From positions 182,769 through 246,768 of IMG/VR virus record IMGVR_UViG_3300025161_000004: a DNA stretch of 64,000 nucleotides, one strand, 5' to 3'. This document shows, piece after piece, positions 29,394 through 47,932 of the stretch (positions within the stretch are counted from its first letter, which is position 1; each line of letters starts with the position of its first letter). The notes beneath the pieces were generated by a model. It made no database searches. It had not been told where the DNA came from and was given only the letters and a program-made list of their open reading frames with translations. Position numbers and translations under genes: made by a program.

Positions 29394-30308
29394 ATGGAAA
29401 ATTTAAAAATTATATTAACAATAGGGATACCAGCGTCAGGTAAATCTACATGGTCAAAAGAATTTGTACGCATAAACAATAACTATGTCCGTGTTTGCCG
29501 TGATGATTATCGTTTAATGTTAGCTCAATCTAATATGCTCAATCCTAAGGGCGAAAAATTAGTTAGCCGATTAGTTAAGAGTGCTATTTCTAATGCAATC
29601 GATTCTAAATATAATGTTATTGTTGATCAAACAAATGTTAATATTAAATATTTGGATGAGTTGGTTGATTTTTGTCAAAAATTGGCTGATGTTGAGTTTA
29701 AAATATTTGATATACCAATAGAATTAGCTATCGAAAGAGATAAGAAAAGAGGTTCTGCTATGGTTGGTGAGGAAATTATAAGAAAAATGTATAAAAATTA
29801 TTTAGATTTATGTTATTCTTTTAATTATGATTTTTCTTATAGGAAGAAAAAATCAAGAATCGTCACAAACATTGATTGGAAACCAAAAAATGAATTACCT
29901 AATGCTGTTATTTTTGATATTGATGGTACTCTTGCACATATAAATGGTAGAAGGGATTACTTTGATTGGGATCAAGTCGATAAAGATTTAGTTGATGAAC
30001 GTGTCCGTCAAACATTAGATGTACATAGATATGCTGGTTACCATATTATTATCGTAACTGGACGTGATGGTTCTTGTGAGAAATTAACTAAGATGTGGTT
30101 AGCAAAAAATAAAATACACTATAATCATTTCTTTATTAGACCTGCAGGTGATTTTCGTAAAGACACTGTCATTAAAAAAGAAATATTCGATAAGTATATT
30201 AATGGAAAATTTAACGTGCTTAGTGTTTATGAAGACAGAGATCGAGTAGTTTCTATGTGGAGAGAAATGGGATTAAAGTGTTTTCAAGTTATTGATGGTA
30301 ATTATTAA
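29394..30308 (+). CDS. pseT: Polynucleotide kinase/3'-phosphatase (T4 Pnkp-like)
   Basis: GIPASGKST P-loop, RDD; HAD DIDGT, TGR, D.VIKKE, EDR. Confidence 0.92.
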   Translation: MENLKIILTIGIPASGKSTWSKEFVRINNNYVRVCRDDYRLMLAQSNMLNPKGEKLVSRLVKSAISNAIDSKYNVIVDQTNVNIKYLDELVDFCQKLADVEFKIFDIPIELAIERDKKRGSAMVGEEIIRKMYKNYLDLCYSFNYDFSYRKKKSRIVTNIDWKPKNELPNAVIFDIDGTLAHINGRRDYFDWDQVDKDLVDERVRQTLDVHRYAGYHIIIVTGRDGSCEKLTKMWLAKNKIHYNHFFIRPAGDFRKDTVIKKEIFDKYINGKFNVLSVYEDRDRVVSMWREMGLKCFQVIDGNY

Positions 30309-32527: not shown

Positions 32528-32565
32528 TTTTTTAAAAAAAAAATAAGTTTTTTTTGATTTAAAAG

Positions 32566-32583
32566 TATTTAGTACTATATTTG
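32566..32583 (+). promoter_or_regulatory. Promoter of tRNA operon 3
   Basis: GTATTTA, then TATATTTG at 32576-32583. Confidence 0.7.
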
Positions 32584-32599
32584 CAAAATATTTAAGGGA

Positions 32600-32668
32600 A
32601 TGATAACTATTAAGAAATATTATTATAAAAAGTCTTCAAAAGTGAAGATCAGTAATACTATATCTTAA
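32600..32668 (+). CDS. Leader peptide 3 (Lys/Tyr sensing), 22 aa
   Basis: MITIKKYYYKKSSKVKISNTIS; GTGAAGATCAG antiterminator segment. Confidence 0.9.
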   Translation: MITIKKYYYKKSSKVKISNTIS

Positions 32669-32685
32669 CAGTAATATAAAAAAAT

Positions 32686-32728
32686 AAAAACCCTGATCTT
32701 CACAAAAAGATCAGGGTTTTTATTTTTT
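32686..32728 (+). terminator. Attenuator terminator of tRNA operon 3
   Basis: AAAAACCCTGATCTT-CACAAA-AAGATCAGGGTTTTTATTTTTT, abutting tRNA-Tyr. Confidence 0.92.
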
Positions 32729-32812
32729 GGGAGTGCGCTAACGTTGGAGTGTTAGGCTTGTCTGTAAAACAAGTGCCTGTTGGCTTAGTAGGTTCGAATC
32801 CTACCACTCCCA
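32729..32812 (+). tRNA. tRNA-Tyr(GTA)
   Basis: CTTGT-CTGTAAA-ACAAG; long variable arm. Confidence 0.9.
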
Positions 32813-32833
32813 CAATAAACCATATAGAAAAAA

Positions 32834-32866
32834 ATGAAAGCTAAACAAAGTAAACGAAAACACTAA
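32834..32866 (+). CDS. Lys-rich mini-ORF before tRNA-Lys, 10 aa
   Basis: MKAKQSKRKH with four AAA codons. Confidence 0.55.
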   Translation: MKAKQSKRKH

Positions 32867-32869
32867 TTT

Positions 32870-32899
32870 AATCACACCTCATGACTAAGAGGTGTGATT
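32870..32899 (+). other. 11-bp hairpin between the mini-ORF and tRNA-Lys
   Basis: AATCACACCTC-ATGACTAA-GAGGTGTGATT, no U tract. Confidence 0.75.
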
Positions 32900-32906
32900 G
32901 GTCAAT

Positions 32907-32993
32907 CCCCTCTTAGCTCTAATTGGCGAGTCGAAAGACGAGAGCTTCTGACTTTTAATCAGAAGGTTGCTGGTTCGAATCCAGCAGAGGGGA
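32907..32993 (+). tRNA. tRNA-Lys(TTT) with expanded D loop
   Basis: TCTGA-CTTTTAA-TCAGA; 22-nt D loop containing a GTC-GAAA-GAC hairpin. Confidence 0.85.
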
Positions 32994-33404
32994 CAAAAAA
33001 AATATTTTTTATTATAATTATCTTTGATAACCATTGTAAGACATATAGTATTTTATACCAGTTCTTATTTACGTAAAAGTTATATAGTATTGAATATTAT
33101 TCAAATTAATGTGTTTTAGTGTTTAGCTTTTTTATTTATATTTGTACTTATAGAAATAAGTTATTATGAATAAAGTGATTGAAAAAGCAAAAACGATAAT
33201 TATATCATTAATTTCATATGAGGTTGCAAGTAAAAAATTTGGTTTTAGATTATATTCTAAAAAGTTTATCGATAATCAAGTTAATCGATACACCCATATC
33301 TAAAGGGATGATTATATTATTTTTTTCGTGTCTTGAATTATCTAATATATTCAATTGACAAATTGAAACTACTGATATATATTTGTTTTTTTAGTTTAAA
33401 ATCT

Positions 33405-39631: not shown

Positions 39632-39716
39632 GCTTGGGTCGCATAGAGGTCGATTGCGCCTGACTTGTAATCAGGAGAGTTTATACTCCACGTGGGTTCG
39701 AATCCCACCTCAAGCT
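39632..39716 (+). tRNA. tRNA-Thr(TGT) with long variable arm
   Basis: CCTGA-CTTGTAA-TCAGG; 16-nt variable region. Confidence 0.85.
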
Positions 39717-39721
39717 CATTT

Positions 39722-43573: not shown

Positions 43574-43664
43574 TCTGGTGTAGCTGATGTGGTTTTAGCT
43601 GCGGACTGTTAATCCGTGAATGAAATATATTGAAATAAAGTAGGTTCGAGTCCTACCACCAGAG
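43574..43664 (+). tRNA. tRNA-Asn(GTT) with a 22-nt variable region
   Basis: GCGGA-CTGTTAA-TCCGT; G73. Confidence 0.82.
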
Positions 43665-43665
43665 C

Positions 43666-47690: not shown

Positions 47691-47764
47691 GTAACCAAGA
47701 TGATTAAATTTTCGTATAATACAACAAATACGATCCATTAGCATAGTGGTTAATGTAGGACTCT
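47691..47764 (+). repeat. Second copy of the direct repeat (intact tRNA 5' half)
   Basis: See 45964-46036. Confidence 0.85.
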
Positions 47765-47803
47765 CTAAAAGTCTTGAGGTGGGTTCGATTCCCACATGGA
47801 TCA
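47732..47803 (+). tRNA. Amber suppressor tRNA(CTA)
   Basis: GATCCAT/ATGGATC acceptor; GGACT-CTCTAAA-AGTCT; GTGGG-TTCGATT-CCCAC. Confidence 0.88.
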
Positions 47804-47932
47804 CAAAAATTTATTAAATATGATCTTAAAGATATATCACAACACCAATCGGAAGGTTGAATATGAACTGTGGGCTGTGGTGTTTTTATTTAAAAATCAT
47901 AAAAAATAACTTAACAATTTGAAACTTTTTAA

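What the first reader, a model, noticed from the sequence alone, without database searches (positions are those of the whole stretch)
32834..32916. Nested second Lys sensor: mini-ORF plus a hairpin that can sequester the tRNA-Lys 5' end
Seen: between the Tyr and Lys tRNAs lies ATG AAA GCT AAA CAA AGT AAA CGA AAA CAC TAA (four AAA codons, the codon read by the next tRNA). An 11-bp hairpin without a U tract follows (32870-32899). Its loop and 3' arm contain CTAAGAGG (32885-32892), the exact complement of CCTCTTAG in the tRNA-Lys acceptor/D region (32909-32916). Inference: a ribosome reaching the stop would cover the hairpin 5' arm, freeing CTAAGAGG to misfold pre-tRNA-Lys, whereas stalling on AAA would let the hairpin and the tRNA fold. 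That would be a translation-coupled tRNA maturation switch separating Lys from Tyr demand. An 8-bp match could be chance.
Basis: partly seen in the sequence, partly recalled or inferred. Interest (0 to 1): 0.65.

Follow-up and report, generated by a model that had tools for sequence, protein, structure and literature searches.

The report
Switch hairpin guarding phage tRNA-Lys
Between two phage tRNA genes, a 10-codon leftover of a lost gene ends right at a conserved RNA hairpin whose second arm can instead pair with the start of tRNA-Lys, so a ribosome finishing that tiny reading frame could decide whether the tRNA folds; this would be a new way of controlling tRNA supply, but it is not yet tested.

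Summary
The window is the last 64 kb of a 247-kb AT-rich jumbo phage from hot-spring and sediment metagenomes.

- **Mini-ORF.** It is not a purpose-built leader peptide. It corresponds to the last 10 codons of a ~147-aa gene that related phages carry intact at this spot. L022 and a complete 363-kb phage (G001) also carry a 10- or 11-codon version.
- **Conserved layout.** AAACGAAAAC is identical in five lineages. In the four relatives it runs on as ...CCTTAR (Lys-Arg-Lys-Pro-stop); the window has CAC TAA (His-stop). The stop abuts the hairpin in all five (-1 to +1 nt).
- **Hairpin.** It occurs in three sequence types with compensatory changes.
- **Alternative helix.** It is kept in all three types although the tRNA 5' ends differ. 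Shuffle p is 0.011, 0.010, below 2e-4 and 0.079.
- **Energetics.** Hairpin and alternative helix are almost iso-energetic in three relatives.

Best reading, confidence 0.45: an attenuator-like 1:2 / 2:3 / 3:4 switch whose 3:4 helix is the tRNA-Lys acceptor stem, gated by the terminating ribosome, downstream of a Tyr/Lys leader-peptide attenuator. No RNA data exist. Translation and the effect on maturation are inferred.

The parts
32554..32728 (+). Context: promoter (TTGATT..TATATTTG, -7 box TAnnTTTG at 32576-83), leader ORF 32600-32668 (MITIKKYYYKKSSKVKISNTIS*), 1:2 stem 32632-38/32643-49, antiterminator 32642-52/32693-703, terminator 32688-32719 plus T tract to 32728. It drives the Tyr-Lys transcript.
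   Evidence: Read. Promoter motif, leader peptide and terminator are conserved in L022, L037, L033, L035, L032, L031 and G001, with co-varying stems in L031 and G001.
32729..32812 (+). tRNA-Tyr(GUA), class II, with C at position 8. ARAGORN misses it.
   Evidence: Rfam RF00005, 39.7 bits, full length. Absent from the ARAGORN list.
32813..32833 (+). A-rich spacer, the untranslated leader of the mini-ORF. It has no Shine-Dalgarno sequence.
   Evidence: This phage's genes do not use Shine-Dalgarno sequences: 7% carry an SD-like 4-mer against 8% background, and -14..-11 is A-rich. Lack of SD is therefore no argument against translation.
32834..32866 (+). Mini-ORF M K A K Q S K R K H *. It corresponds to the 3' end of a ~147-aa gene, starting at that family's conserved internal Met.
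   Evidence: Full-length gene in L035/L036/L033 (ends ...IMRIVNIKRKP*) and L037-L040 (...IMNTLKLKRKP*). L022 has MNTLKLKRKP* and G001 has MYYALRLKRKP* as mini-ORFs.
32852..32861 (+). AAACGAAAAC (Lys, rare Arg CGA, Lys). The most conserved stretch of the spacer.
   Evidence: AAACGAAAAC is identical in window, L022, L035, L037 and G001. In the four relatives it continues CCTTAR, in the window CACTAA. CGA is used 1.6 times per 1000 codons in this phage.
32868..32880 (+). Segment 1: the 5' arm of the hairpin. It starts 1 nt after the stop codon.
32881..32888 (+). Hairpin loop ATGACTAA. Its last four bases, CTAA, belong to the alternative helix.
32889..32901 (+). Segment 2: the 3' arm of the hairpin. 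Nine of its bases pair in both helices.
   Evidence: GAGGTGTGATTG (32889-32900) is identical in L035.
32885..32916 (+). Alternative hairpin 2:3 (13 pairs, tetraloop GGTC). It sequesters linker bases AAT (32904-06) and tRNA-Lys nt 1-10.
   Evidence: -12.7 kcal/mol, z = -3.15. p = 0.011 and 0 of 36 control tRNAs as good. Equivalent helices in L035 (-16.1), L037/L022 (-20.3 to -20.5) and G001 (-11.7).
32907..32993 (+). tRNA-Lys(UUU), 87 nt. Acceptor CCCCTCT/AGAGGGG, discriminator A, anticodon at 32954-56.
   Evidence: Compensatory changes against the L035 orthologue in the anticodon stem (G-C to C-G) and T stem (G-C to A-T). Ordinary bacterial tRNA-Lys contigs match from 32941 onward.
32927..32940 (+). 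Insertion in the D-loop of tRNA-Lys, with a mini-hairpin GTC-GAAA-GAC (GNRA loop).
   Evidence: Kept in L035 with GTAA in place of GAAA.

Best explanation
The Tyr-Lys spacer holds an attenuator-like RNA switch whose output helix is the acceptor stem of tRNA-Lys.

**Segments.** Segment 1 (32868-80) and segment 2 (32889-901) form a stable hairpin that starts 1 nt after the stop codon of a short ORF. Segment 2 can instead pair with segment 3, which is the linker plus tRNA-Lys nt 1-10 (32904-16). That removes the 5' acceptor strand from its partner, segment 4 (32986-92).

**The ORF.** It is not a purpose-built leader. It corresponds to the last 10 codons of a ~147-aa gene that relatives carry whole at this place. 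What is conserved is its end (AAACGAAAAC, then one codon and the stop) and the position of the stop against the stem.

**Proposed working (inferred).** The transcript comes from the upstream promoter, after read-through of the Tyr/Lys-codon leader attenuator.
- If the leading ribosome runs to the stop codon, it unwinds the base of the hairpin. The freed 3' arm then captures the nascent linker and tRNA 5' end, and that precursor is trapped in a fold that RNase P handles poorly.
- If the ribosome is held back on the AAA (or rare CGA) codons 2-4 codons before the stop, because usable Lys-tRNA is short, the hairpin closes first. The cloverleaf then forms and tRNA-Lys matures.

The element would thus tune phage tRNA-Lys output to Lys decoding capacity, separately from the Tyr-sensing step upstream.

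**Shown:** the sequences, the origin of the ORF, conservation and covariation of both helices, and the energetics.
**Inferred:** translation of the ORF, ribosome gating, misfolding, the effect on maturation, and the direction of the regulation.
For: **Same layout in five lineages and three hairpin types.** These are the window, L035, L037/L022 and G001. Each has an ORF end with AAACGAAAAC (followed by CCT-TAR in the relatives and CAC-TAA in the window), a stop -1 to +1 nt from the stem, a hairpin of -16.4 to -21.4 kcal/mol, a 7-8-nt linker, and tRNA-Lys(UUU).

**Hairpin covariation.**
- One base pair is deleted on both arms.
- One pair runs C-G / T.G / T-A, another T-A / A-T.
- G001 has a wholly different stem, TCCACCCCG/CGGGAGTGGA, at the same place.

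**The alternative helix 2:3 is kept although tRNA 5' ends differ.**
- Window -12.7 (p 0.011); L035 -16.1 (p 0.010); L037/L022 -20.5 (p below 2e-4, z about -6); G001 -11.7 (p 0.079).
- No control tRNA is as good in the four loci tested (window, L035, L037, L022).
- Pairs at tRNA positions 1, 3-7 and 9 change on both sides between types.

**Energetics.**
- 1:2 and 2:3 are nearly iso-energetic in L035 (-16.4/-16.1) and in L037 (-21.4/-20.3).
- With the 5' arm masked, 2:3 is the minimum-energy fold in L035, L037, L022 and G001. In the window it wins only before the 3' acceptor strand exists.

**Uniqueness.** No other tRNA of the phage has such a leader hairpin or complementarity.

**Selection on the hairpin.** Its 3' arm is unchanged from L035 while codons 2-6 of the mini-ORF differ at 12 of 15 bases. 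So the hairpin, not the lost protein, is under selection.

**Start codon.** Three lineages keep a short in-frame ORF with an ATG. G001's ATG is one codon further upstream, although G001 holds a full-length paralogue elsewhere.

**Context.**
- The unit sits behind a conserved KKYYYKK leader attenuator.
- Lys and Tyr are the only amino acids among the phage's 38 tRNAs placed here.
- Non-native pre-tRNA folds can lower RNase P cleavage 20-fold (PMC8915964).
Against: - There are no transcript, ribosome or processing data. All public runs holding the region are DNA contigs.
- Only five lineages and three independent hairpin types exist. The alignment of segment 2 between types is defined by the pairing itself.
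- The one lineage found after the hypothesis was formed (G001) is only marginal on its own (p 0.079).
- In the window the hairpin plus cloverleaf is 13 kcal/mol better than the 2:3 fold. With the 5' arm masked the cloverleaf still wins once complete. The switch there could only be kinetic.
- The ORF is a gene remnant. Its in-frame ATG is explained by a conserved internal Met codon and by short direct repeats (about 6 nt in L037, 5 nt in L035) between the gene start and that Met.
- The window ends in His-stop, not Pro-stop.
- A stable hairpin next to a stop codon in front of a tRNA is also what a 3'-end protector of the upstream message would look like.
Confidence: 0.45

Rival explanations
1. 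Inert remnant plus an ordinary intercistronic hairpin. The mini-ORF is a decaying piece of the lost 147-aa gene. The hairpin is the 3'-end protector or processing signal of the upstream message: RNase P cutting at tRNA-Lys leaves hairpin plus 7-8 nt, which resists 3' exonucleases. It may also insulate tRNA folding from upstream sequence. The complementarity to the tRNA 5' end has no regulatory role.
For: - The intact gene ends at the same hairpin in L035 and L037, which is the typical place for a protective stem-loop.
- Short direct repeats explain the in-frame deletions.
- In the window the native fold is far more stable than the alternative.
- The G001 2:3 helix is not significant alone.
Against: - This does not explain why 2:3 complementarity is kept through three different tRNA 5' ends, nor why it is nearly iso-energetic with the hairpin in L035 and L037.
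- It does not explain why hairpin and AAACGAAAAC stay conserved in the window and G001, where there is no protein-coding message left to protect.
Confidence: 0.3
2. A real RNA switch that is not gated by translation. The 2:3 helix would be a co-transcriptional folding intermediate or 'anti-acceptor' that delays or times tRNA-Lys folding and RNase P cleavage. It could respond to temperature (hot-spring phage), to a protein or to transcription speed. The neighbouring ORF end would be incidental.
For: - Both helices are conserved.
- At 65 C the energies of the two states come closer. In L035 the truncated, unmasked transcript already prefers 2:3 at 65 C. In L037 and L022 it does so even at 37 C.
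- The habitat is hot spring and sediment.
Against: - The stop codon lies -1 to +1 nt from the stem in all five lineages.
- The AAA CGA AAA codons are conserved at the nucleotide level.
- An in-frame ATG is kept in three gene-less lineages.

All three would be unexplained coincidences.
Confidence: 0.15
3. An evolutionary by-product at the DNA level. Segments 1, 2 and 3 would come from local inverted or direct duplication (template switching) of the tRNA-Lys 5' end, or from the acceptor-stem relic of a destroyed tRNA copy. Alternatively the inverted repeat is a protein-binding or recombination site. There is no RNA function.
For: - Segment 1 resembles segment 3 in each type (window CAATCACACCTC against CAATCCCCTC; L037 AACACATCA against AACGCATCG), as read.
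- HNH homing genes and mosaic tRNA bodies show that the region recombines often.
Against: - The hairpin base (TCAAyCACA) is homologous between types A and B while the apex follows each tRNA. This would need repeated identical accidents or selection.
- G.U pairs (T.G in DNA) are tolerated in the stems, which points to RNA rather than DNA pairing.
- No repeat family of this hairpin exists elsewhere in the genome.
Confidence: 0.1

Closest known systems
Ribosome-mediated transcription attenuators with leader peptides (trp, his, pheA type)
   Same: A short ORF with codons for the regulated product. Overlapping segments 1:2 / 2:3 / 3:4. The position of the leading ribosome decides which helix forms. 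This element sits directly behind a bona fide example (the KKYYYKK leader, antiterminator and terminator at 32554-32728).
   Different: The 3:4 helix is the acceptor stem of a tRNA, not a terminator, and there is no U tract. The output would be folding and maturation of an RNA product, not transcription termination. The ORF corresponds to the 3' end of a gene, and is that gene's actual end in some relatives. The polarity is reversed: a ribosome at the stop favours the non-productive 2:3 helix.
Translational attenuation and termination-pause leaders (ermC/cat leaders; TnaC, which ends in Arg-Pro-stop)
   Same: A ribosome stalled or pausing at a defined codon of a short ORF remodels the RNA just downstream. 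Four of the five lineages end in Lys-Arg-Lys-Pro-stop, and a C-terminal Pro is known to slow termination (my own knowledge of the E. coli literature, not tested here).
   Different: No ribosome-binding site or Rho site is being exposed. No drug or ligand is implied. The window has His-stop instead of Pro-stop.
Non-native folds of tRNA precursors that impair RNase P (for example mouse n-Tr20 C50U, PMC8915964)
   Same: A stable alternative fold of a pre-tRNA lowers 5' processing (20-fold in that case). That is the step assumed here for the 2:3 state.
   Different: That case is a pathological mutation in a eukaryote. Here the alternative fold is encoded in the 5' leader, conserved, and apparently regulated.
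Phage-encoded tRNAs as counter-defence (T5 tRNA-Lys/Thr/Asn against PARIS AriB; T5 tRNA-Tyr against retron-Eco7/Septu PtuAB)
   Same: The module supplies the two tRNAs, Tyr and Lys, known to be cut by such systems (PMC12409363; PMC11555353 and PMC13096335). The phage copies are structurally aberrant.
   Different: Those phage tRNAs are not known to be regulated. Here they sit behind codon-sensing elements. Nothing links this phage's host to PARIS or Septu.
Stem-loops that protect the 3' ends of messages, and tRNA-linked processing in T4-type tRNA clusters
   Same: A stable hairpin directly after a stop codon and a few bases before an RNase P site.
   Different: Such hairpins need no complementarity to the following tRNA. 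Here that complementarity co-varies.

Membership tests
Leader-peptide (ribosome-mediated) attenuator | Short translated ORF enriched in codons cognate to the regulated product | tested here: inconclusive
   The 10-codon ORF has 4 AAA codons, and AAA CGA AAA is conserved in 5 lineages. However, the ORF corresponds to the 3' end of a 147-aa gene, and translation cannot be tested because no RNA or ribosome data exist.
Leader-peptide (ribosome-mediated) attenuator | Overlapping, mutually exclusive helices 1:2, 2:3 and 3:4 | tested here: met
   9-11 bases of segment 2 pair in both helices in all five lineages. Segment 3 is also the 5' acceptor strand.
Leader-peptide (ribosome-mediated) attenuator | The 3:4 helix is an intrinsic terminator followed by a U tract | tested here: not met
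   3:4 is the tRNA-Lys acceptor stem. The hairpin has no U tract after it and there is no terminator call between 32814 and 32993.
Leader-peptide (ribosome-mediated) attenuator | Stop and regulatory codons placed so that the ribosome footprint covers or spares segment 1 | tested here: met
   The stop codon is -1 to +1 nt from the first paired base in 5 of 5 lineages. The last AAA lies 2 codons before the stop. The footprint reach of about +11 to +15 nt from the P site comes from the literature (my own knowledge).
Intrinsic (Rho-independent) terminator | G+C-rich hairpin followed by a run of U | tested here: not met
   The hairpin is followed by GGTCAAT (window), ATCCAAT, TAAAAAAC or AAAACTCT in the relatives. 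The scan finds terminators only at 32680-32727.
tRNA-Lys(UUU) gene | Cloverleaf with 7-bp acceptor stem, anticodon loop CUUUUAA, T arm GGTTCGAATCC, discriminator A73 | tested here: met
   (the minimum-energy fold is a cloverleaf). Rfam 31.7 bits against a gathering score of 29, as a local hit. Compensatory stem changes against L035.
tRNA-Lys(UUU) gene | Canonical D-loop of 7-11 nt | tested here: not met
   The D-loop is about 22 nt and holds an inserted GTC-GAAA-GAC hairpin. This is why ARAGORN calls it Leu(GAG). The insertion is conserved in L035.
T-box or other known cis-regulatory RNA family | Match to a curated covariance model | tested here: not met
   Rfam at E up to 10 on 32820-33010 gives only chance-level hits for the spacer.
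3'-end protective or processing stem-loop | Stable hairpin at the end of an ORF that ends the processed upstream RNA | not testable with these tools
   The position fits. RNA 3' ends and half-lives would need experiments, and no RNA runs are available.

The most novel reading that the evidence does not exclude
A two-tier, ribosome-read sensor makes a phage's replacement tRNAs inducible.

- First tier: a KKYYYKK leader attenuator opens transcription of tRNA-Tyr and tRNA-Lys when ribosomes stall on Tyr or Lys codons, for example after host nucleases of the Septu/retron or PARIS/PrrC kind cut those tRNAs.
- Second tier: a nested switch lets tRNA-Lys fold and mature only when ribosomes fail to reach the stop codon of the upstream ORF. 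Its 'terminator' position is occupied by the tRNA's own acceptor stem.

This would be the first case of translation controlling the folding of a tRNA precursor.
Probability: 0.3. Interest if true: 0.85.

Novelty: new variant of a known kind. Interest (0 to 1): 0.68.

Why it matters
tRNA genes are usually treated as constitutively made and processed. Phage tRNAs are seen as codon-usage aids or, more recently, as fixed counter-measures to tRNA-cutting defence systems.

If this element works as proposed, a phage reads the decoding state of the cell with a ribosome and adjusts the maturation of one tRNA. It would do so with attenuator logic in which the regulated helix is the tRNA acceptor stem.

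- That would add a new output class to ribosome-mediated attenuation.
- It would give a direct handle for asking how phages sense tRNA depletion.
- It would explain why Tyr and Lys, the tRNAs targeted by known defence nucleases, are kept apart from the other 36 tRNA genes.

The test is short and cheap, because a 260-nt construct holds everything.

Even under the dull reading, the case shows how a regulatory-looking mini-ORF can arise from an in-frame gene deletion.

Tried and rejected
**Searches for near relatives**
- Annotated phages: none.
- DUF5661 neighbours in IMG/VR: 17 loci, no tRNAs nearby.

**DNA pattern scans.** The leader, ORF end plus hairpin, and both tRNA-Lys types were scanned against the viral, metagenome and genome collections.
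- They returned only the window's own contig, L022's contig and L033.
- The five genome hits were chance matches without tRNAs at the site.
- The motif AAACGAAAACNNTAR is absent from 15 further jumbo-phage records.

**The 147-aa family**
- More distant members sit next to Metallophos or Rnl1 genes, or in unrelated contexts. They lack the KRK tail, the hairpin and tRNA-Lys.
- The family has no PHROG match and no precomputed Pfam domain.

**RNA evidence**
- No RNA run holds the region.

**Readings rejected**
- Another genetic code: reading TAG or TGA as sense raises ORF coverage only from 82.6% to 84.5%, despite a tRNA(CUA).
- Intrinsic terminator, for lack of a U tract.
- ARAGORN's Leu(GAG) reading. 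Its anticodon stem has mismatches and lacks U33, whereas the Lys reading is perfect.

**Ideas considered and dropped**
- The hairpin as an acceptor-stem relic of a destroyed tRNA. This leaves the basal 5 pairs and the co-variation unexplained.
- Segment 1 as a primer-binding site for the tRNA 3' end. Only 4 bases match.
- The ORF starting in the hairpin loop (ATG 32881), which is not conserved.
- AAGAGGTG in the 3' arm as a Shine-Dalgarno site. This phage does not use them and it is absent in types B and C.

**Deletions.** Independent deletions keeping the frame were at first taken as evidence of selection. This was downgraded because short direct repeats at the gene start and the internal Met (about 6 nt in L037, 5 nt in L035) explain them.

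**Not used.** Complex prediction and structure prediction were not run, because no protein claim needs them.
Full report
**What the window is.** The window is the last 64 kb of a 246,768-bp IMG/VR virus record (G000, 79% complete by CheckV). G+C is 28.5%, and it has 36 ARAGORN tRNA genes plus one that ARAGORN misses. Near-identical DNA occurs in hot-spring and sediment metagenomes. Genes lack Shine-Dalgarno sequences: 7% carry an SD-like 4-mer against 8% background, with an A-rich -14..-11. The promoter in front of the Tyr-Lys unit has a TAnnTTTG -7 box. From my own knowledge this is the Bacteroidota pattern, so the host is probably of that phylum (inference). The standard genetic code applies.

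**Check of the observation.**
- The ORF is 32834-32866 (MKAKQSKRKH*).
- The hairpin arms are 32870-80 and 32889-99. Free energy is -18.4 kcal/mol with two extra G.U pairs, z = -5.1.
- CTAAGAGG at 32885-92 faces CCTCTTAG at 32909-16.
- There is no U tract and no terminator call.
- The upstream tRNA is Tyr(GUA), 32729-32812 (Rfam 39.7 bits).
- The downstream gene (32907-32993) is tRNA-Lys(UUU). ARAGORN calls it Leu(GAG) only because a 14-nt insertion with a GTC-GAAA-GAC mini-hairpin swells the D-loop, and that Leu model has a mismatched anticodon stem and no U33.
- The Lys reading has a perfect anticodon arm and folds as a cloverleaf.
- It shows compensatory stem changes against its orthologue in L035.
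- From 32941 onward it matches ordinary bacterial tRNA-Lys contigs.

**Where the mini-ORF comes from.** Relatives were reached through the neighbouring PNKP and DUF5661 genes and through the 147-aa gene described here.
- In L035/L036/L033 and in L037-L040 the space between tRNA-Tyr and tRNA-Lys holds a 147-aa gene of unknown function. It has no PHROG match and no precomputed Pfam domain.
- That gene ends ...IMRIVNIKRKP* or ...IMNTLKLKRKP*.
- L022's mini-ORF (MNTLKLKRKP*) is letter for letter the last 33 nt of the L037 gene, and its upstream flank resembles that gene's 5' leader.
- The window's ORF starts at the same conserved internal Met and keeps AAA CGA AAA before the stop.
- The mini-ORF is therefore what remains after an in-frame loss of the gene body.
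- Short direct repeats lie at the gene start and the internal Met: ATGAA or ATGAAY in L037 and TATGA in L035. These give a simple mutational route, so the preserved frame is not by itself evidence of selection.
- Codons 2-6 of the window ORF differ from L035 at 12 of 15 bases, so the exact junction in the window is uncertain.

**A further independent lineage.** A scan of tRNA regions in three other jumbo phages (G001, G004 and G005) found the whole module in G001, a complete 362.6-kb genome. In order it holds:
- the same promoter motif;
- the leader MKKSYSYKTYKKSFSRQGKSM*;
- a terminator;
- tRNA-Tyr;
- an 11-codon ORF, ATG TAT TAC GCT TTA AGA TTG AAA CGA AAA CCT TAG;
- a hairpin with an entirely different stem, TCCACCCCG/CGGGAGTGGA (-16.6 kcal/mol), beginning inside the stop codon;
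- an 8-nt linker;
- tRNA-Lys(UUU).

G001 keeps a full-length paralogue of the 147-aa gene elsewhere. The short ORF is therefore a stable state, and its ATG is one codon upstream of the window's. AAACGAAAAC is identical in all five lineages. In L022, L035, L037 and G001 it continues as CCTTAR.

**The hairpin and the alternative helix.** Three hairpin types exist: A (window, L035), B (L022, L037) and C (G001).
- Between A and B, one base pair is lost from both arms. Two pairs change on both sides or through G.U intermediates. No change disrupts the stem.
- Type C replaces the stem outright.
- In all five lineages the first paired base is -1 to +1 nt from the stop codon.

| Locus | Alternative helix 2:3 (kcal/mol) | Shuffle p | Control tRNAs as good |
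|---|---|---|---|
| Window | -12.7 (13 pairs) | 0.011 | 0 of 36 |
| L035 | -16.1 | 0.010 | 0 of 36 |
| L037 / L022 | -20.5 (14 pairs) | below 2e-4 (z about -6) | 0 of 36 |
| G001 | -11.7 | 0.079 | not run |

- The tRNA 5' ends differ (CCCCTCTTAG, GCATCGGTG, GCACTCGTG). The partners in segment 2 differ with them, at tRNA positions 1, 3-7 and 9.
- Hairpin and alternative helix are nearly iso-energetic in L035 (-16.4/-16.1) and L037 (-21.4/-20.3).
- With the 5' arm made unavailable, 2:3 is the minimum-energy fold in L035, L037, L022 and G001. In the window it wins only while the 3' acceptor strand is still unmade.
- Forced 2:3 costs 8-13 kcal/mol against hairpin plus cloverleaf. The alternative can therefore only be a gated or kinetic state.
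- No other tRNA of this phage has a comparable leader.

**Context.** The unit is preceded by what looks like a textbook trp-type attenuator.
- The leader ORF is 32600-32668 (MITIKKYYYKKSSKVKISNTIS*).
- A 1:2 stem lies just after the Tyr and Lys codons.
- An 11-bp antiterminator (32642-52/32693-703) overlaps the terminator (32688-32719 plus T tract), which runs straight into G1 of tRNA-Tyr.
- Promoter motif and leader are conserved in seven relatives, with co-varying stems in L031 and G001. The terminator is seen in all of them except L032, whose contig ends before it.
- No promoter-like TAnnTTTG box lies in the spacer. tRNA-Lys is therefore most likely co-transcribed with tRNA-Tyr (inference).
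- Lys and Tyr are the only amino acids whose tRNAs are placed here, away from the other arrays.

**How it most likely works.** This section is inference from the anatomy.
- Segments 1:2, 2:3 and 3:4 (3:4 being the acceptor stem) form an attenuator-like set.
- With the stop codon in the A site, the ribosome's unwinding reach is about +11 to +15 nt from the first P-site base (my own knowledge of the literature). That opens the lower 3-7 pairs in the window and more in types B and C.
- The bases of the 3' arm freed this way are the ones complementary to the linker: GATT with AATC in the window, GTT with AAC in type B. They give a toehold for 2:3 as the tRNA 5' end emerges.
- A ribosome held on the AAA codons 2 and 4 codons before the stop does not reach the stem. 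The hairpin then closes and the tRNA folds.
- Pro-stop in four of the five lineages may prolong occupancy at the stop. This rests on my own knowledge that C-terminal Pro slows termination in E. coli.
- That non-native pre-tRNA folds can depress RNase P cleavage is documented (20-fold, PMC8915964).
- The net effect would be more tRNA-Lys when Lys decoding is failing.

I put 0.45 on this. I put about 0.6 on the weaker claim that 2:3 is a selected alternative structure of some kind, and about 0.9 on the ORF being a gene remnant.

**Rivals.**
- An ordinary 3'-end protective or processing hairpin with incidental complementarity (0.30).
- A switch not gated by translation, for example thermal or protein-dependent (0.15).
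- A duplication or template-switch by-product, or a DNA-level site (0.10).

The first is weakened because hairpin and motif persist where no gene is left to protect (window, G001). The last is weakened by tolerated G.U pairs and by the apex of the stem tracking each tRNA.

**Comparison with known systems.**
- It works like a leader-peptide attenuator but fails the terminator criterion, so it is not a member of that family.
- It is not a T-box or any Rfam family.
- Full-text searches found no report of leader-peptide or translation-coupled control of tRNA genes. Absence from that library is not proof of absence.
- The biological rationale comes from recent work. PARIS AriB cuts tRNA-Lys(UUU), Thr(UGU) and Asn(GUU) and reads the D-loop (PMC12409363). 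Septu/retron-Eco7 PtuAB targets tRNA-Tyr, in one case at its variable loop (PMC11555353, PMC13096335).

**Limits.**
- There are five lineages and three independent hairpin types.
- The alignment of segment 2 between types depends on the pairing itself.
- The post-hoc lineage, G001, is marginal alone.
- There are no RNA data.

Noticed in passing
window 32554-32728; also L022 7567-7748, L037 1610-1792, L033, L035, L032, L031, L064 (minus strand) 3060-2880: A conserved trp-type attenuator lies in front of tRNA genes. It has a Bacteroidota-like promoter (TAnnTTTG), a leader peptide rich in Tyr and Lys codons (KKYYYKK, or YSYK.YKK in L031 and G001), a 1:2 stem, an antiterminator and a terminator that abuts G1 of tRNA-Tyr. 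Leader-peptide attenuation of tRNA genes did not turn up in the literature searches.
   Followed up: partly
window 32907-32993 (Lys UUU), 39632-39717 (Thr UGU, 86 nt), 43574-43665 (Asn GUU, 92 nt): The three tRNAs with aberrant insertions are Lys (D-loop), Thr (extra variable arm) and Asn (24-nt variable loop). These are exactly the three E. coli tRNAs cut by the PARIS nuclease AriB, which also reads the D-loop (PMC12409363). All three keep the U36-A-A-U-C site. They may be nuclease-resistant replacement tRNAs.
   Followed up: partly
L022 7750-7823, L037 1793-1867, L033/L035, L064 (minus strand) ~2877-2807: Relatives carry two or three tRNA-Tyr(GUA) genes, including a form with a short 4-5-nt variable loop, which is unusual for a bacterial-type tRNA-Tyr. 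Septu is reported to cut the variable loop of tRNA-Tyr (PMC13096335). In the window's tRNA-Tyr the only polymorphisms seen in other samples (32773, 32776, 32777) lie at the anticodon-stem/variable-arm junction.
   Followed up: no
L022 against L037 (Tyr2 and Lys bodies); window against L035: Between very close relatives (about 99% identical in leader and spacer), the anticodon stems of tRNA-Tyr and tRNA-Lys are replaced by different but still paired sequences. This suggests fast, compensated evolution of the anticodon arm, as expected under pressure from anticodon-arm nucleases.
   Followed up: no
L022 8113-8180, L037 2583-2667, L035 2853-2920, L064 (minus strand) ~2450-2400: A conserved element of about 70 nt follows tRNA-Lys genes (GGGRA..GTATGTRC..ATCTG..GTCAGAT..). 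It has nested stems, including ATCTGA/TCAGAT in L035. It has no Rfam match and is absent after the window's tRNA-Lys. It could be an unknown small RNA.
   Followed up: no
L035 2222-2295: A canonical-length tRNA-Lys(UUU) has C at position 33, where U33 is almost universal, and C39 in place of U39. An HNH endonuclease gene (2343-2816) lies between the Lys genes and overlaps the start of tRNA-Lys(CUU).
   Followed up: no
window 47732-47804: This is a tRNA with anticodon CUA (an amber suppressor, labelled Pyl by ARAGORN). The genome shows no sign of TAG recoding: ORF coverage is 82.6% under the standard code and 84.5% with TAG as sense, no better than with TGA as sense.
   Followed up: partly
window 29394-30308; L042: A T4-type polynucleotide kinase-phosphatase gene lies 2.2 kb upstream of the Tyr-Lys unit. 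Distant members of the 147-aa family sit beside Metallophos and T4 Rnl1-type RNA ligase genes. The neighbourhood looks like a tRNA-repair and tRNA-supply island.
   Followed up: no
L068 15473-15980 (G004): Another jumbo phage has two consecutive Tyr-Lys tRNA pairs. Each pair is separated by a short AT-rich 7-bp hairpin (TTACTA..TAGTAA), without a mini-ORF. The Tyr-Lys pairing recurs beyond this phage group.
   Followed up: no
L024 1798-1871 (minus strand): A Pistol ribozyme match (47.7 bits against a gathering score of 34.5) occurs in a 290-kb phage that shares the PNKP gene.
   Followed up: no
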